Shown here: piece after piece, positions 1,501 to 12,285 of the stretch | Position numbering within the stretch: position 1 is the stretch's first letter | How the letters are laid out: the number at the start of each line of letters is the position of its first letter | Origin: Octopus sinensis | Lineage: Eukaryota | Assembly: GCF_006345805.1 (NCBI RefSeq) | Contig: NW_021826322.1 | Location: 1 to 13,226, forward strand | Length of the DNA: 13,226 nt | Direction of reading: 5' to 3' | Translations under genes and position numbers: made by a program | Notes under the pieces: generated by a model | Told to the model about the DNA's origin: nothing | Databases searched by the model: none | What the model saw: the letters and a program-made list of their open reading frames with translations, nothing else

Positions 1501-1874
1501 AGTTGATAACAAGTTTATTAGTTCCGTCAAGAGAAATTCCGGAATACATAAACACTCTCATTGCAACATGGCAAAAAACAAACAAAGCATGTAGACAGCA
1601 GATGAAAATATATGATATGCGTCTTCATTAAACAATCACATAGATCTCAAAGTGAAATAAAACAACTTTGTAGAGTGCAAGTGATGGCAGGATACCGTAC
1701 ATATGTAAGTACTAAATTCAATTTGTGACCACGGATCCGACTCATCAGTGGACCTTGGTTTGGCGTAATTATAGAACAGTTAACACGAGTGACGTTAAAA
1801 ACTTACGACAGCTGTTTCAGTACAATTTTATTTAATGTAAAATATAACATCATAATATATCGTCTACCATCATA

Positions 1875-1911
1875 GACGCAGGAGTGGCTGTGTGGTAAGT
1901 AGCTTGCTTAC
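1875..1911 (+). mobile_element. 5' piece of a tRNA-derived SINE (called family A here), cut by the 1912-4199 insertion
   Basis: gacgcaggagtggctgtgtggtaagtagcttgcttac matches the start of the uninterrupted copy at 5883 (ggagtggctgtgtggtgagtagcttgtttac); contains the A-box-like tggctgtgtgg. The SINE resumes at 4200. Confidence 0.9.
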
Positions 1912-2020
1912 AGGTTGCTTCTGCGCATGTGCAAGTCTGTGTTGTGCTTGACACCGAAGATGTAAGACGTGTTTTTGAAAGCCGTCTTAAATTGAAGAAT
2001 TTTGAATACTCAGCCGTAAG

Positions 2021-2565
2021 GTAAGAATTTTGGGGGTCTAGTGGGGACCTGTTGTATGTTGCAAATTATTTTTACAAGCAACAAGTCCTCACTAGGCTCT
2101 AGTCTGCCGGAGGCTGAGTGAAAAAAATTATTCACTTAATTGTGAAAATTATTGGTTTGGTTGGCTTATCCTGCCAAACTTTTGTTTGAAAATAGTGTTG
2201 TTCCTGTTAAGAAGTACCTAGAAGAAATTTGGAATGTTTTTTTTAACTGTTTTACAGTTGTGTTAAATTTTGGCCGTAACGGTGAATTAAGAATTTTGTT
2301 TGAGAATTCTTCTTGTGAATTCTAGTGGGCGTATCTCGCCCCCACCAAAAAAATAAGAATAAGCCATTTGGATTACCTTTTTGGAGTATTACACAAAGGA
2401 TTCCCTGTCTGTGCTATTTGTAAGATTTTTCTTTTACTTTTCCCTTCTTCTATTATTTCTTTCTTTCTAAAAATGTTTGGTTCATTCTTTTCATTACTTT
2501 AATTCCAGTTTCCTCCCCTCCCCTTTAATTTGTTTTATTTTTATTTGGTTTAATTTTCTTGGCAG
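2021..2565 (+). other. Putative spliceosomal intron in the 5' UTR of the ORF1-only element
   Basis: Donor AAG|GTAAGA at 2021; pyrimidine-rich stretch ~2425-2560 ending ttttcttggcag| at 2565; ATG follows at 2602. No transcript evidence. Confidence 0.5.
2033..2100 (+). other. 68-nt RNA stem-loop in the element leader
   Basis: 2033-2054 pairs with 2079-2100 at 21 of 22 positions (4 G-U pairs, one C-A mismatch); short inner stem ttgcaaa/tttacaa. Confidence 0.65.
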
Positions 2566-2601
2566 ACTGTCTTTTGAACTACTTTTGAACTGTTTTTTGA
2601 C

Positions 2602-3874
2602 ATGGCAGAGAAGGAACTTAAAAAGAAAAACTCTGTCTTAGAGTGGGAAATTAACCCGCCTAAGCAATGGTTAAAAGATATGGAAGAGAAGACGATGGTA
2701 CTTAGAACATATTCTAAAGTTCTTAATTCCATCACCGTCTTTCCAAAACAAGTCATAAAAAATGAACTTAAAGAACATTTGTCCTCTGTAAAATATATAT
2801 CCCGTGGTGTCAAACATGCAACCGTATGGTTGCTGTTTGACAACGGGGAAAAAGCTCGCCAGTTTGCGAGTCAGCCTTTAGAAGGCAAGGAAATCCTGTT
2901 TCTCCCGTCATATTGTGGAAGAAAATTAATACGAGCTTGGATATGTGGGCTCCCCCCGAGCACCGAAGCGGATTGGATTGAAGATACCATCCGACGGGGA
3001 CTGGGAGATGGCGGGCCCAGTCTCTTAAATGTAAGAGTATTACCGGCGGTCGATTGGGAAGGGTCAAAAGCGATTTTGACCCTGTGGACCCCATCGGCAG
3101 CAAAAAGAACTGGTTTTTCCAAATTTCTTGAAAATGGCTGGCTACAGGTATCCGGTGATACTTGAGGGACGTCCTCCAAAGTGTCACTCGTGCCTGCAGC
3201 CAGGCCACATTAAAAGGAACTACCCAGGACCATGGTAAGGTCCTGGAACAGTCACCAGATGCCACCTCCCCTACCCGGTCAAGGGAGAGGTGGATGTAGT
3301 CGAGGAGGCTTCAGCTTCCTCAACTCAAAAAGGATTAAAAAGGAAGAAGGCGGGCAACAATAGTTGCACGCCGAAGGAACCTAGGGCTTCGGGAGGCGGG
3401 GGAGAGTCTCCGGACAAAGCGGAAGGGCTCCACTCTCCCGAAGCCAGGAAGAAAAGAAAAAAAAGAAAGAAGAAGAACGGGTCATCTCAGCAGGGAGATG
3501 ATGTGCCGACTGCATGTCCCGAAGTTGTGCCACCCATGGTGGAAGAAACCACCCCCACCCTTAAAGATGATCAATTAATTATCTTTTTCTACAAGGGCGG
3601 GGAGGTGGAAAAAATAGTAGAAGAACTTAAAGAAACAGTAGATATGCCCTTCACACGGGATCCCGAATGGCCTCCGCAGATAGCTGTGGAGGTCATAAGG
3701 TTACCCTTGTGGGAAAGGCTTAAAGGATTTGGGGAGGAGTGTCGCATATGGCCGGGTGGCCCTTACACGACTTACATGTCCTACATGAGTGAGGCATGAG
3801 AAATGGCGGGATACAGGAACTCAAGCGGCATTGAAGATAATGATGAATATATCGATGGATATATCGAAGAGTAG
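2602..3874 (+). pseudogene. Decayed gag/ORF1-like nucleic-acid-binding protein (RRM-like N-terminus, CCHC knuckle, basic segment, C-terminal domain), ~420 aa reconstructed
   Basis: Frame 1 from ATG 2602 (KTMVLRTYSK...VWLLFDNGEKARQF...RAWICGLPP). A +1 shift near 3080-3110 leads to frame 2: FPNFLKMAGYRYPVILEGRPPK-CHSCLQPGHIKRNY (3182-3223, CX2CX4HX4 with the last Cys as TAC, one transition from TGC). In-frame TAA at 3236, then the 3290-3799 ORF in the same frame, TGA at 3797, and 24 further in-frame codons to TAG 3872-3874. Confidence 0.8.
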
Positions 3875-4199
3875 GAGGCGAAAGACCCTCGTTACAGAGT
3901 TTGAAACTTCACCTTATTGGACTATTTTGTAGTGGTTTATAACCTCAATTTTGTGTTTTAAGAAAGAAAATAGAAAATATGTTAAGTAAGAGGTTTTAGT
4001 GCCTCCTCCTTGTAAAAGGTTCGAAATCTTATATTGATTTAAAAAAAAAAAAAAAGAAAATATGTTTTCGAAAAAAATCCAATCGGCGGGTGTTGGGTTT
4101 CGTCTCTCATTTATTCATTATAATTCATTTTCATTCATTAATGTGATTGTCCAGCCCGCAAAGCTCTTTGTACTGTCTATATGACAAATTTATGAAATA

Positions 4200-4486
4200 A
4201 AGTAGCTTGTTTACCAACCACATGGTTCCGAGTTCAGTCCCACTGCGTGGCACATTGAGCTAGAATCTTCTACTTTAGCCTCGGTCCGACCAAAGCCTTG
4301 TGAGTGGATTTGGTAGACGGAAACTGAAAGAAGCCCGTCGTATATATGTATATATATATATATATACAAATTGAGATAGGGGTTGTAAATGCAACCCTCC
4401 ATGGGATAACATATATCCAATATACTGTAGTGAAGTACCCAACAAGTTAATACAATTTGTTTAGATGTATTTTCTCATGTTTTATT

Positions 4487-4535
<49 letters not shown>

Positions 4536-4790
4536 TATATATATATATAATTATATATATAGATGCGTGTGTGTGTTTCTGTGTCTGTGTTTGTCCCCCT
4601 AGCATTGCTTGACACCGATGCTGGGTGTTTATGTACCCGTTACTTAGCGGATCGGCAAAAAGAGACGGATAGAATAAGTACTGGGCTTACAAAAGAAAAA
4701 GTCCCGGGGTCGAGATGCTCTATTAAAAAGGCGGTGCTCCAGCATAGCCGCAGTCAAATGACTGAAACAAGTAAAAGAGAAAGAGAGAGA
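4200..4790 (+). mobile_element. Remainder of the interrupted family A SINE (B box, body, central TA/TG tract, 3' domain)
   Basis: Collinear with 5900-6354: gagttcagtccc B-box-like, gtgagtggatttggtagacggaaactgaaagaagcccgtcg, 3' end gcagtcaaatgactgaaacaagtaaaagag. Confidence 0.92.
4367..4488. mobile_element. 122-bp unique segment inside the SINE's central (TA)n tract, unclassified (possibly a Penelope-like terminal fragment)
   Basis: Flanked by (TA)n on both sides and absent from the other family A copies; the class is a guess. Confidence 0.45.
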
Positions 4791-5129
4791 TAGGGTAAAC
4801 TTTTAAACACAGATATTAAGCGGCCGATCTGGACACACACATATGAGATTGGAATAATGTAGGAGATTCATATAAAATCTTTCTTATGGTATCATTAATT
4901 GCATAATTTTTATACGGATTCCATTAACGTCTTAGAGTACGCTTTGCAGTTATTGTTACATCGATCATTGCGTCGTCAACATCAAACGTCTGATCTTGAG
5001 GAGGAAATAGTAAATTAATTGATTGTTAATTACCAAAATGAGTTGTTAGGTAGAGCTAAATATGAACTGCGAGTACATTTAGTAGGCCATTCTCCATATA
5101 GATGTCAAAAGAGGAATTATATATATATA

Positions 5130-5169
<40 letters not shown>

Positions 5170-5180
5170 TTTGTGTGTGT

Positions 5181-5487
5181 GGAGGCGCAATGGCCCAGTG
5201 GTTAGGGCAGCGGACTCGTGGTCGTAGGATCGCGGTTTCGATTCCCAGACCGGGCGTTGTGTGTGTTTATTGAGCGAAAACACCTAAAGCTCCACGAGGC
5301 TATGGCAGGGGTTGGTGGCGATTCCTGCTGTACTCTTTCGCCGCAACGTTCTCTCACTCTTTCTTCTGTTGGCCTGCTCGCTTAGCCAGCGGGGAGGCGT
5401 CACTTGAAGGCTTAAACAATGCGAAGCGCATTGTAACCAGCGATGTGTAGAAACATCTGATAGACTGGCCGTTCACATGATAACTTG
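5181..5487 (+). mobile_element. tRNA-derived SINE (family B) embedded in a microsatellite
   Basis: A box tggcccagtgg (5191-5201), B-box-like ggtttcgattcc (5234-5245), then a ~240-nt non-tRNA body ending in (TA)n. May correspond to the tRNA-Arg-derived octopus OR families (not verified). Confidence 0.8.
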
Positions 5488-5533
5488 ATATATATATATA
5501 TACATACACATACATACACACACATATTAATTT

Positions 5534-5762
5534 TACGAGAGGGTGCTGAAAAGTTCCTGGCTTTGGTGAAAACAAAATACCTGAAAATCAGTTAATTATG
5601 ATTATATTTCGCATGTTCCCCTGTCAGGTTAACACACTTATTGCATCGGTGCTTCCGTTTTTACCAGCCCTGTAATAGAATTCGGAGGGTTGGGCCACCG
5701 ACCAGGCTTTCGCGATACTCTTAAAGCCAGAAATCTTTTCATCATTCCCCCGCCCCCTCGTA
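5534..5762. mobile_element. Tc1/mariner-type MITE with TA target duplication
   Basis: Left end TA-cgagagggtgctgaaaagttcctggcttt; right end aaagccagaaatcttttcatca[ttcccccg]ccccctcg-TA is its imperfect reverse complement with an 8-nt insertion; no transposase. Confidence 0.8.
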
Positions 5763-5882
5763 CATTAACAGAGAGATAAAGAAACAAAGAAAAGCGTGGG
5801 GGGTGTATAAGCGTCTTCAGGTTGTCTGTGGTTAAGAACTTATTCGACAACTAAACAATCATAGTTCAAAGAAATTTCCAAA

Positions 5883-6354
5883 GGAGTGGCTGTGTGGTGA
5901 GTAGCTTGTTTACCAGCCACATGGTTCCGGGTTCAGTCCCACTGCGTGGCACCCTGGGCAAGTGTCTCTTACTATAGCCTCGGGCCGACCAAACTCTTGT
6001 GAGTGGATTTGGTAGACGGAAACTGAAAGAAGCCCGTCGTATATATGTATATATATATATATGTAAACAGTAAAAATAAATACAGACATGGACAAGAACA
6101 TGAAACACCAAAGAGACGACACAAGAACCGCAGGACATGCGTGTGTGTGTTTGTCCCCCCTAGCCTTGCTTGACAACCGATGCTGGTGTGTTTATGTCCC
6201 CGTTACCTAGCGGTTCAGCAAAAAGAGACCGATAGAATAAGTACTGGGCTTACAAAAGAATAAGTCCCGGGGTCGAGTTGCTTTATTAAAAAGGCGGTGC
6301 TGCAGCATGGCCGCAGTCAAATGACTGAAACAAGTAAAAGAGTAAAAGAGTAAA
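5883..6354 (+). mobile_element. Full-length family A SINE
   Basis: tRNA-like head (tggctgtgtgg, gggttcagtccc), body, central TA/TG tract, 3' (gtaaaaga)n tail; high identity to 1875-1911 plus 4200-4790. Confidence 0.93.
6065..6136. other. 72-bp unique A-rich segment inside the central tract of the second family A SINE
   Basis: Lies between (TA)n and (TG)n; unrelated to the insert at 4367-4488. Confidence 0.5.
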
Positions 6355-6597
6355 CGATGATAAAAAGCTTCGAATTTTAGAAGCGGATCAAAAAGAAAAG
6401 AAAACTGAACAGTACGTACTTATTTAGTTGCGCAGATATTTTAGTATACATATAAGCAACTATACACAAGACAGAGTGAGTCCAAATACAGCACCGGTTG
6501 TCAAACGGAAACTAATTTTTAGTCATATTCCTGGACGTTATTCCGAATGGCCGTTCTCTCACTGCCTCTTCCTGTCAAATGCGCATGCTCTTTACAT

Positions 6598-6830
6598 CTA
6601 TTTCTTTATTGCCCACAAGGGGCTAAACATAGAGGGGACAAACATGGACAGACATAGTTATTAAGTCGATTATATCGACCCCAGTGCGTAACTGGTACTT
6701 AATTTATCGACCCCGAGAGGATGAAAGACATAGTCGACCTCGGCGGAATTTGAACTCACAACGTAACGACAGACGAAATACGGCTACGCATTTCGCCCGG
6801 CGTGCTAACGTTTCTGCCAGCTCACCGCCT
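6598..6830 (-). mobile_element. SINE (family C)
   Basis: Reverse complement of 8968-9187 nearly end to end; B-box-like gagttcaaattcc. Confidence 0.9.
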
Positions 6831-6985
6831 TTGTATCAACGTTATTTGCATAAGAGTATGTAAATATATATATATATGTGTATGTATATGTATGTGTGTA
6901 TAAGTATTGTGTGTGTGTGTGCGTACAACGTGCTTTCCCTCAATTTCCTCCTAACAGATTAACTCGCATACCCTTGGTCTGGCAT

Positions 6986-7061
6986 AGGTACCGTTCTGTG
7001 GGACTGAACCCGAACTCATACTGTTTCAAAACCAGCTTCCAAACCACACATCCGGCCTTGC
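6986..7061 (-). mobile_element. Diverged tRNA-head fragment related to family A
   Basis: Reverse complement reads ggatgtgtggtttggaagctggtt...gttcgggttcagtcccac, alignable to the family A head. Confidence 0.6.
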
Positions 7062-7708
7062 ATCTAAGTGTGTGTGTGTGTGCGTGCGCGCGCGGGCATT
7101 TGTGCGTATGTGTGTGTGTGTGTGTGTGCGTGTAGGCATGCTCGCATCGTCTATTTAGGAATTTAGGTATGCATTTAAGCGTCTATATCGATATGTGTCT
7201 ATGTGTGTGTATATGTGTGCGCCTGTGTGTTTGTGCGTGTGCCTGTGTGTGCATGTGTGTGTGTGTGTGTTTGCATGTGTGTGTGTGTGTGAGTGTGTGT
7301 GTGTGTGTGTAATCCTAGAAACTCACTCATCTCATGGGGTTCCTATGATGGAAGTATATTGCGTACGATCAAATGATAAAATATACAAGATAGTTAATTT
7401 CTCGGTTCTTGTTGTTATTGCAGCTGTCTTGATTCATTCAGATTGGAACAGAATATCATTCGATCTTGTAGATAAATTTTAAATTTAAATTTAAATAGAT
7501 AATCTCCTGTCATTATTAATTTTTGTGTGTGTACAATATTTTTATGAATATCTAAATTGGACTTCTTATAGGAAAATAAGTTAACCCATTCTTCATTTAT
7601 TTATTTTGAACATTTATCTAACTCAACTACGAAAAGCTTATTTAATAATCTTGCCAGTGCGAGTAATGCCCTTTTTAAGAAGGCCTCTTTCATTCATTGT
7701 TCGTTTAT

Positions 7709-8107
7709 TTCATTTACCTGTTTCAGTCATTAGATTGTGACCATGTTGGAGCAACACCTTGAAGGATTTTTGTGGGCCGAATCGGCCCCAGAGTTTAGTA
7801 TTTTTTGCGAAGCCTGGTACTTATCCTATCGGTCTTTTGTGGAACCGCTAGGTTACGGGGACTTAAGCACACCAACACCGGTTGTCAAGCGATGGTGGTA
7901 GACACACACGTATATATTGCATATATATGCGCGTATGCGTGTGTGTGTGTGTATGTGTGTGTGTGTGAAGTATGTATGTATATACACATAGGTCGGGTTT
8001 CTTTCAGTTTCTCTCTACCAAATCCATTCACAAAGCGTGGAAGGTGCCACGCAGAGGCACAGAACCCGGAAGCATGTGGCTTAGAAGAAAACTTTTAACC
8101 ACATAAC
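7709..8107 (-). mobile_element. Older, diverged family A-related SINE with an internal deletion
   Basis: tgtttcagtcat, cctatcggtctttt, accggttgtcaagc, tttctttcagtttc, ctaccaaatccattcacaaagc and gtgccacgcag are reverse complements of family A landmarks, in order. Confidence 0.85.
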
Positions 8108-8354
8108 AACGCGTATTTTGTAAATATTTTCACATAAACTGTAAACAGGAAGTGAATTTTGAAGTACAATGTTTATTAAAACAAACTAAACAGCGACGTA
8201 TTCTTTCTCATTGTCACTAATGCCGTCATACTCTTAAGAAGTATAGCATTCTAGAAGATATTTCTATTTTTCAGATTTTGTTTTTCAATTGCTACTGTAT
8301 ACAGAGACACAACATTATATTCCTAACGCTATTGATATAAGTACCAAATCCAAT

Positions 8355-8583
8355 TTAACCCTTTAGTGTTTGCATTATTCTGCCAAAATTAATGCCTTTT
8401 AATCCACATTGTTTTGTACTAATCAAGTATTATCTTGTAGCTATGAGATTTTGATGAGGTAGCTGTTAATTTTTAAAACGATATTGTAGGGTTGGTGTGA
8501 GAGACCAGATCTCACCAGTTTGAACATAAAACAGGCAGAATACTTTTGGCCGGATATGGCCTGTTTAAATGCTAAAGGGTTAA
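8355..8583. mobile_element. piggyBac-type MITE (TTAA target duplication, CCC termini)
   Basis: TTAA-ccctttagtgttt ... aaatgctaaaggg-TTAA (TIR 11/13); subterminal inverted attctgcc/ggcagaat; 221 bp between the TTAA copies. Confidence 0.8.
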
Positions 8584-8661
8584 ACCGTAAATCCGATTCA
8601 GGGTTGATTCTAGGTGCGGCGTTGGTTTAAAAAAAGAACACAAGTAGGGTTTTAAAAAGAA

Positions 8662-9625
8662 CACAACCATCTCCTGTTCCTAGATGGCGAAGGCAAATCC
8701 TTTGAAGTCGAATGTAATGTAGCTATCAGAGGCCAAGGAAAGACAACTTTTCCTGTCAATGCTGTTGCTTTCCTTAGCTTATGGGATATGTAGTCATGTA
8801 TTGCTTTTTGCTGGTATGCTGCTTGCTTCTTCTCCAAGCTTCTGATTAGGTAGCTTAGTGTTATGTCACGCATTATAACGATATACTTTGTCGTCTGCGT
8901 GACTGGCTCCAACGGCGTACTTCGCCGGCTGACTCCACTCGTTTTGTCTGTCCTCTATTTATTTGTGATGGCGAGCTGGCAAAAACGTTAGCACGCCGGG
9001 CGAAATGCGTAACCGTATTTCGTCTGTCGTTACGTTGTGAGTTCAAATTCCGCCGAGGTCGACTTTGCCTTTCATCCTTTCGGGATCGATAAATAAAGTA
9101 CCAGTTTCCCACTGGGGTCGATGTAATCGACTTAATCCCTTTGTTTGTCTCCTCTATGTTTAGCCTCTTGTGGGCAGTAAAGAACTATATTTATTTGTGG
9201 TGGAACAGCGCACTTCTCTCACTCGGAGTGCCCTCCACAACAGATAGCTAGCTTCATTTGGATCGTATGAGACAGTTGTATTCTCAGAGTACTTGTTTAG
9301 TACTTCCCGAACTCCGGAAATGTTCTAGATCTCACTTTAGAGTATGCATGGAATGTACTCATATATTTCTTTACTGTTCAACAGGTTTCCCCTGAGTGAT
9401 ACAAAGCGACATTCAATGACTGTTTGGCCCAACCTCATGGATCTTATTGTGTTGCTATTGATGCGGAAGTTACCAGTGCTGGTCAATTTTTTTTTACATT
9501 TGATGACGAGGATGCGGATCTCGTCTAGTATCCAGTTCAATATCCCAAATGTTGGTACTGCAAAAGTATTATGAGATATGGTCCTGTTAAATGCAGGCAG
9601 CTCTGATTTCCATATTTTCCAGAGC
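8662..9625 (-). pseudogene. Relic of an R4/Dong-like (restriction-like endonuclease clade) non-LTR retrotransposon ORF, RT thumb region to pre-zinc-finger region; split by a SINE
   Basis: Minus-strand IWKSELPAFNRTISHNTFAVPTFGILNWILDEIR...KKLTSTGNFRINS and ECRFVSLR; beyond the SINE, QQKAIHDYISHKL, then after a frameshift IDRKSCLS...YITFDFKGFAFAI*EQE. The order matches my recollection of R4/Dong ORFs (N.FAVP..FGI..W, K.LHG, EG...AIQEQ). Confidence 0.7.
8968..9187 (+). mobile_element. SINE (family C) with a perfect 12-bp target-site duplication
   Basis: tatttatttgtg at 8956-8967 and 9188-9199; homologous to 6598-6830. Confidence 0.92.
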
Positions 9626-9899
9626 CACATATGTATGCATGTATCTACGTAGGCATATATATGTATGTATGCATCTATGTATACAGAACCAAAGAGAGAC
9701 AGACAGATAGACAAAAAGAAAGTAAAAGACAGGTAGACAAGGGTATCATCTATGAATATAAAGTCTATGGTTAATTGAATATCAAAGATAAAAGCTATTG
9801 CAGATTAATTATTGTATATAATTAAGAAAAATCTATAATCATTTCTGTTAGTATTAGAATATAAAATGTATATTTTCTGAAATTGAATGATTTGTTATT

Positions 9900-10598: not shown

Positions 10599-11406
10599 AT
10601 ATTTCGGAATGGTCATATTGCAGTTTAGCCAATAAAACACACACGCACTATATATTTGGTGTTATTTTGCTTCAGTGATATTATTTTTTTACATTAATCT
10701 CAATCTTATTTCGACCAAAGTTCTTCGTCACACTCTGTGACCGCATCAGTGGTCCTTTGTTTTGTTCTCACCTATTTTTGTCATTCCTTACTAACGTCAG
10801 CCATTTTGTATTTCTATTGTATGTCTTCATTGCGCATGCTTATATCTCTATGTGCGTCTATGTTTATTTAGTGTGTGTGTGTGGGGGGGATGCCTGAATA
10901 TTGTATCTTCTGTTTATATACATTCTTGTAAGTTGTATTTTGTTTTTGTTGTTGTTGCTTTTGTTCTAATTTTGTTCATGTGCTTACATCCACCCATTAT
11001 TATCATCACATATGCTTGTATGTATGTATAACAACAATATTAGTAATAGAATAATAATCTAATCGAAAAAAAAAAAAAAAAATATAGATATATATATATA
11101 TATATATATACCTACATACATATCACACACACATATACACATATACATATATATATATACCATACATGATATATATACATATATATATTATTCATTTCTA
11201 TTTCTATTTGTTTATTTATCTGTGTATTTATTATGTTTTCAGGATCCTCTATCGTCATATGTTGTGTGTGTGCTATTGCTCCATTCTAGTTTTTCTATTC
11301 AGGCTAGGTTTATTTTCTATTATATGTGTAGCTTCTGTAATTTGTCTAATGTTGCATCTGTTCTATGTGTGGACAATATCTTAATCTCTATGTTATTGAT
11401 TGATCC

Positions 11407-11574
11407 GAACAGGAACACAGGGGATCAATCAATAACATAGAGATTAAGATATTGTCCACACATAGAACAGATGCAACAATTAGACAAATTACAGAAGCTA
11501 CACATATAATAGAAAATAAACCTAGCCTGAATAGAAAACTAGAATGGAGCAATAGCACACACCACAACATATGA
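11407..11574 (+). pseudogene. C-terminal 55 codons of a PLE GIY-YIG endonuclease
   Basis: EQEHRGSINNIEIKILSTHRTDATIRQITEATHIIENKPSLNRKLEWSNSTHHNI*; R.I.EA..I....P.LN is the typical GIY-YIG C-terminal signature of Penelope ORFs. Confidence 0.8.
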
Positions 11575-12049
11575 CGATAGAGGATCCTGAAAACATAATA
11601 AATACACAGATAAATAAACAAATAGAAATAGAAATGAATAACTATATATATGTATATATATCTATGTATGTGTATATATTATATATGTATATGTGTATAT
11701 GTGTGTTTATATGTATGTATATATATTTTTTTTCGATTAGATTTATTATTATTATTACTAATATTGTTGTTATACATACATACAAGCATATGTGATGATA
11801 ATAATGGGTGGATGTAAACACATGAACAAAATTAGAACAAAAGCAACAACAACAAAAACAAAATACAACTTACAAGAATGTATATAAACAGAAGATACAA
11901 ATATTACAGGCATCCCCCCCAACACACACACTAAATAAACATAGACGCACATAGAGATATAAGCATGCGCAAATGAAGACATACAATAGAAATACAAAAT
12001 GGCTGACGGTTAGTAAGGAGAGACACAAATAGGTGAGAAGAAAACAAAG

Positions 12050-12090
12050 GACCACTGATGCGGTCACAGTGTGACGAAAGAACTTTGGCC
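12050..12090 (+). ncRNA. Variant minimal hammerhead-ribozyme-like motif in the PLE terminal repeat (mirror copy at 10713-10754, minus strand)
   Basis: gacca-CUGAUGCG-gucac(agu)gugac-GAAA-gaac-UU-uggcc (uggUc in the mirror copy). The core departs from canonical CUGANGA. Confidence 0.5.
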
Positions 12091-12285
12091 GAATAAGATT
12101 GAGATTAATGTAAAAAATAAATATCACTGAAGCAAAATAACCCAAATATATAGTGCGTGTGTTTTTTTTGCTAAACTGGCATTATGACCATTCCGAAATA
12201 TAACATATCTGTTTCAACACACGACTTCACATAAAAAATCTTGCACAACAAATTTAAACGTATATATATATATATATATTATATA

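What the first reader, a model, noticed from the sequence alone, without database searches (positions are those of the whole stretch)
1912..4199. ORF1-only ('half-LINE') retroelement with a 15-bp TSD and no reverse transcriptase
Seen: a discrete 2,288-bp insertion bounded by a 15-bp duplication, containing a single ~420-codon frame (RRM-like region, CX2CX4HX4C-type knuckle, lysine-rich segment) followed directly by an AT-rich 3' region, with no EN/RT coding remnant. Known: TSDs of this length fit target-primed reverse transcription; RRM plus CCHC ORF1s typify L1/Tx1 elements; ORF1-only HAL1 elements are described mainly from mammals. Inference: this is an independently derived HAL1-like non-autonomous family that kept its own ORF1 and borrowed ORF2 in trans. 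I do not know of one described in cephalopods. This copy is dead (1 frameshift, 2 internal stops, Cys-to-Tyr).
Basis: partly seen in the sequence, partly recalled or inferred. Interest (0 to 1): 0.85.

Follow-up and report, generated by a model that had tools for sequence, protein, structure and literature searches.

The report
ORF1-only LINE derivative inside an octopus SINE
A dead 2.3-kb retroelement that carries only the RNA-binding first gene of an octopus LINE and no reverse transcriptase sits inside a SINE, and its only two known relatives abut the same SINE position, so it is probably a parasite of a LINE, possibly one with a preferred landing site.

Summary
Window 1912-4199 is a discrete insertion that splits an ordinary octopus SINE. 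It is bounded by a 15-bp duplication (14/15 identical), and an uninterrupted SINE copy at 5872-6065 shows the empty site.

It holds one ORF (2602-3799): two RRM-like folds, a CCHC knuckle, a lysine-rich linker and a conserved C-terminal module. No endonuclease or RT remnant is present.

The ORF belongs to a superfamily of octopod proteins that elsewhere sit directly upstream of APE-endonuclease/RT/zf-RVT ORF2s of L1/Tx1-type LINEs. It is therefore a LINE ORF1.

Two further copies of the same family turned up in Octopus sinensis. They share the 5' end, show dN/dS of about 0.2, and have no ORF2 after them. Both have lost their 3' parts, so "ORF1-only as the transposing form" is likely but unproven.

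- The copy is disabled by three small indels (+4, -2, -1), not by one frameshift plus two stops.
- The TGA at 3797 is the natural stop.

New finding: all three copies are preceded by the same SINE head, joined at the same position. This suggests Tx1-like target preference.

The RT donor was not identified. Verdict: a new member of a known kind (HAL1/HeT-A-like), of moderate interest.

The parts
1872..1911 (+). 5' part ('head') of the host SINE, interrupted at 1911
   Evidence: Aligns to generic SINE copies in the window and in O. sinensis loci (D20, 7, 46, 99, 101).
1897..1911 (+). Left copy of the target-site duplication, AAGTAGCTTGCTTAC
   Evidence: It is 14/15 identical to the right copy. 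The intact SINE at 5899-5913 carries this sequence once.
1912..1920 (+). 9-nt filler AGGTTGCTT at the 5' junction; an imperfect repeat of the target AGCTTGCTT
   Evidence: Absent from the L001 and L007 copies, whose element sequence begins at the equivalent of 1921. Its origin is an inference.
1921..2601 (+). 5' untranslated region; its 5' terminus CTGCGCATGTGC is shared by all three copies
   Evidence: BLASTN from 1912 onward matches L001 9479-9737 and L007 15730 onward. Three-way alignment.
2602..3799 (+). ORF1 (about 398 codons, disabled); natural stop TGA at 3797-3799
   Evidence: About 65% amino-acid identity to P0001 (O. sinensis) and about 60% to the L007 copy. The stop is conserved at the same codon in L007.
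2662..3108 (+). Two tandem RRM-like modules (residues about 21-169)
   Evidence: AlphaFold2 pLDDT 87, pTM 0.74. Foldseek top hits are tandem-RRM proteins raver1, IMP3 RRM12 and hnRNP A1 UP1, E = 5e-4 to 1e-2. dN/dS is 0.08 against L001.
3098..3105 (+). Lesion 1: 4 extra nucleotides relative to L001, shifting the frame by +1
   Evidence: Alignment A12.
3182..3223 (+). CCHC zinc knuckle, CX2CX4HX4[C>Y]. Lesion 2, a 2-nt deletion at 3222/3223, lies inside the last Cys codon
   Evidence: Pfam zf-CCHC E = 0.011, below the cut-off. The knuckle is intact in L007 (CYRCLESGHIKKNC). The deletion is seen.
3280..3283 (+). Lesion 3: a 1-nt deletion that brings the reading back to the frame of the C-terminal half
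   Evidence: Alignment A14 and translation.
3446..3475 (+). Lysine/arginine-rich linker (RKKRKKRKKK)
   Evidence: The equivalent basic stretch occurs in P0001 and in distant ORF1 homologues.
3566..3796 (+). Conserved C-terminal module of unknown fold
   Evidence: 43% identical to L007 17281-17622, E = 9e-23. dN/dS is 0.47. No database relatives. hhalign against the C-terminal modules of distant ORF1s is not significant. AlphaFold2 pLDDT 38.
3800..4199 (+). AT-rich 3' region with an internal A-run (4041-4060); ends ...TTTATGAAATA with no poly(A) tail
   Evidence: Positions 3800-3848 are still collinear with L007. Positions 4104-4153 resemble the 3' UTR of the ORF1-only element in L004: Smith-Waterman score 18 against 9.7 +/- 1.6, reached by 1 of 2000 dinucleotide shuffles. 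No match to the canonical LINE tail.
4200..4214 (+). Right copy of the target-site duplication, AAGTAGCTTGTTTAC
4215..4366 (+). Remainder of the host SINE
   Evidence: Window 4201-4366 (this remainder plus most of the right duplication copy) is 91% identical to 5900-6065 (D16).
5872..6065 (+). Uninterrupted paralogous SINE copy, used as the empty-site reference (not part of the element)

Best explanation
WHAT IT IS. The insert is a dead copy of a non-autonomous retroelement derived from an octopod L1/Tx1-group LINE. It keeps the 5' UTR, the complete first ORF and a short 3' region, and lacks ORF2.

LIKELY MECHANISM.
1. The unit is transcribed from its 5' UTR, or read through from the SINE it sits in.
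2. Its ORF1 protein (two RRM-like modules, one CCHC knuckle, a basic linker, a C-terminal module) coats its own RNA.
3. An APE-endonuclease/reverse-transcriptase ORF2 protein supplied in trans by an autonomous LINE nicks the target and copies the RNA in by target-primed reverse transcription. This leaves a 12-15-bp duplication.
4. The family appears to land preferentially at one position of an abundant octopus SINE (top strand ...GTGGT|AAGTAGCTTGYTTAC|CAACC...). This is the kind of target preference known for Tx1-clade LINEs.

SHOWN: the insertion and its duplication; the LINE-ORF1 identity; the absence of ORF2 in this copy; a multi-copy family with a shared 5' end; purifying selection on the ORF.

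INFERRED: trans-mobilisation; ORF1-only as the family's transposing form; the target preference; the promoter.
For: - Insertion, duplication and empty site.
- Tandem RRM-like fold. CCHC knuckle.
- Profile search gave 75 hits, almost all of those traced being octopod proteins of the same layout.
- Four of those hits lie directly upstream of ORF2s carrying Exo_endo_phos + RVT_1 + zf-RVT: L002, L003, L005 and L006.
- The L005 ORF2 matches human LINE-1 ORF2p end to end, E = 4e-42, against 1e-19 for R2.
- The autonomous Argonauta element has a 15-bp duplication.
- No EN/RT similarity in the window, nor downstream of the two O. sinensis copies.
- The three copies share the 5' terminus.
- dN/dS is 0.20 (bootstrap 0.13-0.30) against L001. 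For window versus L007 (N- plus C-terminal parts) it is 0.19, and for L001 versus L007 (N-terminal part) 0.23. The C-terminal module is also constrained.
- A second ORF1-bearing, ORF2-less element of 1.73 kb with its own 15-bp duplication exists in O. vulgaris (L004).
- All three copies are preceded by the same SINE head joined at the same position within 4 nt, with unrelated DNA further upstream.
- SINEs make up 11.6% of the O. vulgaris genome and L1-Tx1 families are annotated there (PMC13282606).
- Tx1-clade LINEs are known to target specific repeats, including transposons (PMC4494074).
- The related LINE in L002 is flanked on both sides by (ATT)n.
Against: - Only three copies are known, and the two O. 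sinensis copies lack their 3' parts. Neither a shared 3' end nor family-wide absence of ORF2 is demonstrated.
- The window's 3' end does not carry the tail CCCTTGTGG(C)NAATAAAGAAAT shared by the related autonomous LINEs, the L004 element and a second SINE family. No RT donor is identified.
- The C-terminal module could not be linked to the C-terminal modules of the LINE ORF1s.
- The SINE-head association could mean instead that the head travels with the RNA. All three heads carry TTGCTT, whereas four of the generic copies examined carry TTGTTT, although two diverged generic copies in L002 also carry TTGCTT.
- Head and 5' UTR divergence do not discriminate between the two readings.
Confidence: 0.55

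Rival explanations
1. One-off deletion derivative. A normal bicistronic L1/Tx1-like LINE inserted here, or its RNA was internally deleted, and ORF2 was lost in this copy alone. On this reading the family's transposing form is a full-length LINE.
For: Distant relatives of the ORF are all ORF1s of bicistronic LINEs. The other two family copies are truncated before or just after the ORF1 stop, so they cannot show what followed. The L004 ORF1-only element looks like a deletion from the ORF1 linker to the 3' UTR, which shows that such deletions happen.
Against: The break would have to fall neatly between the natural ORF1 stop and a 3' UTR. About 50 nt after the stop are collinear in the window and L007, and neither leads into an ORF2. 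No ORF2 remnant lies downstream of any of the three copies. LINE families normally leave mostly 5'-truncated copies rich in ORF2, yet all three finds here are 5'-complete and ORF2-less. There is an ascertainment bias, however: the copies were found through ORF1.
Confidence: 0.2
2. The SINE head is part of the transposed RNA. This could be 5' transduction or co-transcription from a master copy lodged in a SINE, or a composite 'SINE-with-cargo' mobilised through the SINE's own tail. On this reading the shared junction is inherited, not a target preference.
For: L001 and L007 have nearly the same junction (TTGCTTCC...). All three heads carry C where four of the generic SINE copies examined carry T, and the window's right duplication copy carries T. 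Heads are not clearly better conserved than the adjacent 5' UTR. Co-transcription with the target is known for site-specific LINEs (PMC4494074).
Against: In the window the element is followed by the exact continuation of the SINE with a 15-bp overlap, and the re-joined SINE is as close to the family consensus (92.9%) as ordinary copies. The element copies differ from one another by 30-38%. So at least this copy really entered a generic SINE at that site. A head carried in the RNA does not exclude site-specific insertion; for R2-type elements the two go together.
Confidence: 0.15
3. Retrocopy (processed pseudogene) of a host gene domesticated from a LINE ORF1, comparable to mammalian L1TD1.
For: Very few copies are known. 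P0001 is annotated as a gene with three transcript isoforms in O. sinensis RefSeq. dN/dS is below 1.
Against: All three copies are broken (P0001 has Cys>Phe in the knuckle and a premature end). No intact parent was found in the proteomes of O. sinensis, O. vulgaris or O. bimaculoides, or anywhere else. There is no poly(A) tail. All copies retain the same 5' UTR and abut the same SINE site, which fits a transposable unit and not random retrocopies.
Confidence: 0.07

Closest known systems
HAL1 ('half-L1') elements of mammals
   Same: A non-autonomous LINE derivative that encodes only ORF1p and depends on an autonomous LINE's ORF2p. HAL1 arose several times independently (PMC5753468, citing Smit 1999 and Bao & Jurka 2010).
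   Different: HAL1 derives from mammalian L1, with a Type II ORF1 (coiled coil, one RRM, CTD; Pfam Transposase_22) and a poly(A) tail. This element has a Type I-like ORF1 (two RRM-like modules plus CCHC) with an extra C-terminal module, has no poly(A) tail, and occurs in a cephalopod. Family-wide ORF1-only status is not yet shown.
HeT-A telomeric retrotransposon of Drosophila
   Same: A non-LTR element that encodes only a Gag/ORF1-type protein with zinc knuckles, lacks pol, and relies on an RT from elsewhere. It is strictly targeted (PMC5537684).
   Different: HeT-A belongs to the Jockey clade, transposes to chromosome ends without a nick, and has a host function. Here the insertion is internal, has a target duplication, and no host function is indicated.
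Tx1-clade target-specific LINEs (Tx1L, Keno, Kibi, Koshi, Tx1-Mar)
   Same: L1-group LINEs with RRM/CCHC-type ORF1s. Many insert at one sequence, including other transposons (Tx1D, Mariner-N4_AMi), and mobilise non-autonomous partners to the same target (PMC4494074; PMC5203782). L1-Tx1 families are annotated in O. vulgaris (PMC13282606).
   Different: Those elements are autonomous, and clade membership is defined by RT phylogeny, which cannot be applied to an element without RT. The SINE preference here rests on three copies.
Octopod L1/Tx1-like LINEs found here (L002 and L003 Octopus, L005 Argonauta)
   Same: Their ORF1s are the window protein's distant homologues (23-28% identity, same layout). 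The Argonauta element has a 15-bp target duplication.
   Different: They carry a 1,100-aa APE + RT + zf-RVT ORF2 and end in the tail ...CCCTTGTGG(C)NAATAAAGAAAT. The window element's end does not match that tail.

Membership tests
LINE ORF1p, Type I (RRM + CCHC; Khazina & Weichenrieder classes as summarised in PMC5203782) | At least one RRM fold | tested here: met
   The AlphaFold2 model (pLDDT 87) has two beta-alpha-beta-beta-alpha-beta modules. The best Foldseek PDB hits are tandem RRMs. Pfam RRM models do not hit, so the fold is non-canonical at sequence level.
LINE ORF1p, Type I (RRM + CCHC; Khazina & Weichenrieder classes as summarised in PMC5203782) | CX2CX4HX4C zinc knuckle after the RRM region | tested here: met
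   Present at 3182-3223 with the last Cys lost to a 2-nt deletion. It is intact in L007 and in distant homologues.
LINE ORF1p, Type I (RRM + CCHC; Khazina & Weichenrieder classes as summarised in PMC5203782) | Homologues encoded immediately upstream of an EN/RT ORF2 in one element | tested here: met
   True for the distant homologues P0002, P0003, P0059 and P0079. Not true for any copy of the window's own family.
ORF1-only non-autonomous LINE (HAL1-like in the broad sense) | No EN/RT coding sequence between the target-site duplications | tested here: met
   tblastn with two ORF2s found nothing in the window. Only 400 bp follow the ORF1 stop.
ORF1-only non-autonomous LINE (HAL1-like in the broad sense) | Many copies sharing both termini, each with its own duplication and none with ORF2 | tested here: inconclusive
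   Three copies share the 5' terminus and none is followed by ORF2. The two O. sinensis copies are 3'-truncated, and the source genome could not be searched.
ORF1-only non-autonomous LINE (HAL1-like in the broad sense) | ORF kept under purifying selection | tested here: met
   dN/dS is 0.19-0.23 overall and 0.08 in the RRM region. The pN/pS 95% bootstrap interval stays below 1 in all comparisons.
ORF1-only non-autonomous LINE (HAL1-like in the broad sense) | 3' end shared with an autonomous partner LINE | tested here: not met
   Tail and 3' UTR profiles from L002, L003, L004 and L005 do not hit 4061-4199 (E > 1). The only link is a local similarity to the L004 3' UTR. The true partner may simply not be among the few loci available.
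HAL1 proper (mammalian L1-derived) | ORF1 of the L1 Transposase_22 type (coiled coil, RRM, CTD) | tested here: not met
   No Transposase_22 hit even at E <= 10. The architecture is RRM-RRM-CCHC. The resemblance to HAL1 is functional, not membership.
Tx1 clade / target-specific LINE system | RT-domain phylogeny placing the element in Tx1 | not testable with these tools
   The element has no RT. For the related autonomous LINEs, only 'L1 group' could be shown: full-length match to human L1 ORF2p plus zf-RVT. No reference RT set was available for a tree.
Tx1 clade / target-specific LINE system | The same sequence in more than 20% of flanks (criterion used in PMC4494074) | tested here: inconclusive
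   Three of three 5' flanks are the same SINE head joined at the same position within 4 nt, and one of one readable 3' flanks is the SINE remainder. The sample is only three copies, and the head could be RNA-borne.
Processed pseudogene of a host gene | Poly(A) tail at the 3' junction and an intact parent gene elsewhere | tested here: not met
   The element ends ...ATGAAATA directly at the duplication. No intact parent was found in any proteome searched.

The most novel reading that the evidence does not exclude
An old lineage of RT-less, ORF1-only retroelements in octopods. Its synonymous divergence between copies exceeds 1. On this reading it has stayed under purifying selection while inserting specifically at one nucleotide position of an abundant SINE. 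That would make it a parasite of a LINE that itself nests in the LINE's other parasite, possibly with its own ORF1p (unique C-terminal module) or a co-transcribed SINE head contributing to target choice.
Probability: 0.3. Interest if true: 0.6.

Novelty: new member of a known kind. Interest (0 to 1): 0.42.

Why it matters
ORF1-only LINE derivatives are well documented only in mammals (HAL1) and Drosophila (HeT-A). A cephalopod example built on a Type I (RRM-CCHC) ORF1 would show that losing the reverse transcriptase while keeping the RNA-binding protein is a recurrent route for LINE parasites. It would also give a natural test of what ORF1p contributes in cis.

Octopus genomes are unusually rich in SINEs and LINEs, and LINE activity there is under active discussion. 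A SINE-site-specific family would add a safe-haven targeting strategy to that picture. It would also offer a defined target sequence for studying the endonuclease of an octopod L1/Tx1 element.

If the family turns out to be a few deleted copies, the finding is ordinary.

Tried and rejected
- Pfam on the ORF pieces gave only a sub-threshold zf-CCHC hit. A PDB sequence search with the profile gave nothing meaningful.
Piece A and P0001 each returned only P0001. The C-terminal module returned nothing.
- The window's ORF is not on record as a called gene, so the source assembly could not be identified.
- hhalign of the C-terminal module against the 'FPxDVG' C-terminal modules of distant ORF1s was not significant.
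- AlphaFold2 on the C-terminal module with four rows gave pLDDT 38, which is unusable.
- A test for a 3' tail shared with autonomous LINEs used three nhmmer profiles. None hit the element's end. Instead they found a second SINE family in the window.
- A search for the missing 3' UTR or SINE remainder downstream of the L001 and L007 copies found nothing above shuffles.
- BLASTN of the 3' region against the available loci found only A-runs.
- The divergence argument (SINE head versus 5' UTR) was dropped, because with gap-tolerant alignment the two are similar: 81-86% versus 78-79%.
- ARAGORN and Rfam did not recognise the SINE as tRNA-like, so 'tRNA-derived' is not claimed.
- Loci L004-L006 never appeared in the script sandbox, so they were analysed through the ORF and sequence tools and by pasting short stretches.
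- No collection of cephalopod genomic DNA can be searched by DNA similarity with these tools, so copy number could not be measured.
Full report
1. THE OBSERVATION

The window is octopod DNA, rich in microsatellites and SINEs.

SINE homology runs up to 1911, stops, and resumes at 4200. The 15 nt before the break (AAGTAGCTTGCTTAC, 1897-1911) recur after it (AAGTAGCTTGTTTAC, 4200-4214). An uninterrupted copy of the same SINE at 5882-6065 matches 1880-1911 (94%) and 4201-4366 (91%) and carries the 15-mer once. It therefore serves as an empty-site reference.

When one duplication copy is removed, the re-joined host SINE is 92.9% identical to a consensus of generic copies. Those generic copies are 93-96% identical to that consensus. 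The 2,288 bp at 1912-4199 are thus a discrete insertion into an ordinary SINE copy, with a 12-15-bp target-site duplication. The first three nucleotides of the duplication (AAG) could equally be element sequence.

2. ANATOMY

One long reading frame starts at ATG 2602.
- There are four extra nucleotides at about 3098-3105.
- There is a 2-nt deletion at 3222/3223, inside the last Cys codon of the knuckle. This is why that codon reads Tyr.
- There is a 1-nt deletion at about 3281.

Read in the ancestral frames there is no premature stop. The TAA at 3236 is out of frame. The TGA at 3797 coincides with a TAG at the same codon of the L007 copy, so it is the natural stop. The ORF is about 398 codons.

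An AlphaFold2 model of residues 1-187, built on 61 aligned homologues, has pLDDT 87 and shows two beta-alpha-beta-beta-alpha-beta modules. Its best PDB matches are tandem-RRM proteins: raver1, IMP3 RRM12 and hnRNP A1 UP1 (E = 5e-4 to 1e-2). TM-scores are low because the relative orientation of the two modules differs.

After the RRM-like region come:
- the CX2CX4HX4C knuckle (3182-3223; Pfam zf-CCHC E = 0.011);
- a basic linker (3446-3475);
- a roughly 77-residue C-terminal module (3566-3796).

The C-terminal module is conserved in L007 (43% identity, E = 9e-23). It has no other relatives, no significant profile match to the C-terminal modules of other ORF1s, and no confident fold.

The last 400 bp are AT-rich, contain an internal A-run, and end without a poly(A) tail. 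tblastn with a degraded ORF2 and an intact 1,132-aa ORF2 from related LINEs finds nothing in the window.

3. WHAT THE PROTEIN IS

A profile of the N-terminal region, searched against 1.84 billion representative proteins, gave 75 hits at E <= 1e-3. The ones that could be traced are mostly from Octopus sinensis, O. vulgaris, O. bimaculoides and Argonauta hians. They have the same layout: an RRM-like region, one CCHC knuckle, a basic or low-complexity linker, and often a C-terminal module.

Their genomic contexts settle the identity:
- In O. sinensis (L002) the homologue is followed by a degraded Exo_endo_phos + RVT_1 + zf-RVT ORF2.
- In O. vulgaris (L003) it is part of a head-to-tail array of full LINEs with an intact 1,132-aa ORF2.
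- In Argonauta (L005) ORF2 starts 38 bp after ORF1, and the 5.4-kb element has a 15-bp duplication, TCTTCAACTTATGTT.
- A marine-metagenome contig (L006) shows the same arrangement.

The Argonauta ORF2 aligns end to end with human LINE-1 ORF2p (E = 4e-42). It aligns with R2 proteins only over the RT (E about 1e-19). The superfamily is therefore the ORF1 of L1-group LINEs. L1-Tx1 is the L1-type superfamily annotated in O. vulgaris (PMC13282606). RRM/CCHC 'Type I' ORF1s are those associated with Tx1 and plant L1 (PMC5203782). Assignment to the Tx1 clade proper needs an RT tree, which I could not build.

4. THE FAMILY

Only one close protein exists in the 5.8-billion-protein collection: P0001 (O. 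sinensis LOC115225585, 65% identity). Its locus, L001, holds a copy collinear with window 1912-3602 at 64-70% nucleotide identity. That copy then breaks off.

A 44-residue match inside the chimeric gene model P0011 led to a third copy, L007 15730-17675. It is collinear with window 1912-3848 at 62% identity and carries several stops and frameshifts.

All three copies start at the same element nucleotide (CTG[C/T]GCATG...). None is followed by EN/RT sequence on the same strand.

Pairwise dN/dS values:

| Comparison | dN/dS |
|---|---|
| Window vs L001, all 282 codons | 0.20 (bootstrap 0.13-0.30) |
| Window vs L001, RRM region | 0.08 |
| Window vs L007, N- plus C-terminal parts | 0.19 |
| L001 vs L007, N-terminal part | 0.23 |
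| Window vs L007, C-terminal module alone | 0.47 |

Synonymous sites are near saturation. Most of the divergence between these copies therefore happened while the ORF was functional.

The criterion 'other copies continue into ORF2' is not met either, but it is only weakly tested. Both O. sinensis copies have lost everything beyond the ORF, and no 3' UTR or SINE remainder can be found downstream of them.

Supporting context comes from O. vulgaris locus L004. It carries a different subfamily's ORF1 (389 aa, intact) followed by 512 bp of 3' UTR and no ORF2. The whole 1.73-kb unit is bounded by TGCTGGGTTCG[T/G]CTA. ORF2-less, ORF1-bearing retroposed units therefore occur more than once in octopods.

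5. A NEW OBSERVATION: THE SINE HEAD

In all three copies the element is directly preceded by the first 40 nt or so of the same SINE. The junction is at the same SINE position within 4 nt, and the DNA upstream of the head is unrelated.

If insertion were random, the chance per copy of hitting that position and orientation is of the order of 0.116 x 9/300 x 0.5, or about 2e-3. This is my estimate; the SINE share of 11.6% is from PMC13282606.

Two readings remain.
- Target preference. This is known for Tx1-clade LINEs and the non-autonomous elements they move, including preference for other transposons (PMC4494074). In line with this, the related LINE in L002 is flanked on both sides by (ATT)n, and L003 is a tandem array.
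- The head travels with the RNA. In favour: all three heads have TTGCTT where four of the generic copies examined have TTGTTT (though two diverged generic copies in L002 also have TTGCTT), and the window's right duplication copy has TTGTTT.

The window copy at least is a real insertion into a generic SINE. The two readings are not exclusive, since site-specific LINEs such as R2 are co-transcribed with their target. Head-versus-UTR divergence did not discriminate between them.

The 9 nt at 1912-1920 (AGGTTGCTT) are absent from the other copies. They look like a partial repeat of the target, made when the 5' junction formed (inference).

6. THE 3' END AND THE MISSING PARTNER

The autonomous LINEs in L002, L003 and L005, the L004 element, and a second SINE family present twice in the window (6600-6830 minus strand, 8965-9186 plus strand) all end in ...CCCTTGTGG(C)NAATAAAGAAAT. 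The window element does not. Three profile tests gave no hit at 4061-4199.

Its 3' region shows only a local similarity to the L004 3' UTR: 4104-4153, Smith-Waterman score 18 against 9.7 +/- 1.6, reached by 1 of 2000 dinucleotide shuffles. The RT donor is therefore unidentified, and trans-mobilisation is inferred from the structure, not demonstrated.

7. COMPARISON AND VERDICT

In function the closest parallels are:
- HAL1, an ORF1-only L1 derivative that arose repeatedly in mammals (PMC5753468);
- Drosophila HeT-A, which is Gag-only, lacks pol and is targeted (PMC5537684).

It is not a member of HAL1 proper, because it has no Transposase_22-type ORF1. The literature searches found no ORF1-only LINE described in cephalopods, but those searches are limited to open-access text.

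I rate it a new member of a known kind. My confidence that it is a LINE-ORF1-bearing retroposed insertion is about 0.95. My confidence is about 0.55-0.6 that ORF1-only is the family's transposing form, and about the same that the SINE preference is real.

Interest is moderate. It would rise if the genome-wide census (next steps 1-2) confirms a SINE-site-specific, RT-less family.

Noticed in passing
window 6600-6830 (- strand) and 8965-9186 (+ strand): There are two inverted copies (92% identical) of a second SINE family. Its 3' tail, GTCCCCTCTATGTTTAGCCCCTTGTGGGCAATAAAGAAAT, is the same as the 3' tail of the autonomous L1/Tx1-like LINEs in L002, L003 and L005. This is a LINE/SINE tail partnership (I1, 67, 81, 82).
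   Followed up: partly
L003 (O. vulgaris OX597840.1), 2584-17026: This is a head-to-tail array of at least three full-length LINEs with a period of about 5.28 kb. One has an intact 1,132-aa APE + RT + zf-RVT ORF2 (4058-7453) and may be an active element.
   Followed up: partly
L004 (O. vulgaris OX597833.1), about 7925-9651: A 1.73-kb unit carries an intact 389-aa ORF1 (P0008 family), no ORF2 and a canonical LINE tail. It is bounded by TGCTGGGTTCG[T/G]CTA, making it a second ORF1-only retroposed element.
   Followed up: partly
L002 (O. sinensis CM016872.1), 9720-9778 and 15345-15385: The degraded bicistronic LINE here is flanked on both sides by (ATT)n. This hints at microsatellite-targeted insertion, as in the Tx1-clade elements Kibi and Koshi.
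   Followed up: no
L005 (Argonauta hians), 7788-7802 and 13247-13261: A nearly intact 5.4-kb LINE has a perfect 15-bp target duplication, TCTTCAACTTATGTT, the same length as in the window.
   Followed up: yes
window 3797-3871; L007 17623-17670: Both copies have a stop at the same codon (TGA in the window, TAG in L007), yet stay alignable in frame for about 15-24 codons after it. This could be nucleotide-level conservation or a read-through extension.
   Followed up: no
L007 (O. sinensis CM016865.1), gene model for P0011: The annotated 376-aa protein is a chimera. Its first coding part comes from the third copy of this retroelement family, and the rest from an LTR-retrotransposon integrase (Pfam rve).
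   Followed up: yes
window 1921-1932; L001 9489-9500; L007 15743-15755: The conserved 5' terminus of the element, CTGCGCATG(T/C)G, resembles the GCGCATGCGC (NRF1-type) palindrome. It may be a promoter element placed at the transcription start. The resemblance is recalled from memory and was not tested.
   Followed up: no
window 10656-12146: There are nested inverted repeats around about 11,400, the inner two near-perfect: 10901-11048/11753-11900 at 99%, 11188-11266/11563-11641 at 100%, 10656-10737/12065-12146 at 84%. This is either a large palindrome or an assembly artefact.
   Followed up: no
window 4625-4787 and 6188-6350: A 163-bp repeat (93% identical) follows both SINE copies at a similar distance. 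It also occurs in O. sinensis (L001 20725-20773). The SINE may be longer or composite, or the repeat may belong to an associated family (D17, 32).
   Followed up: no
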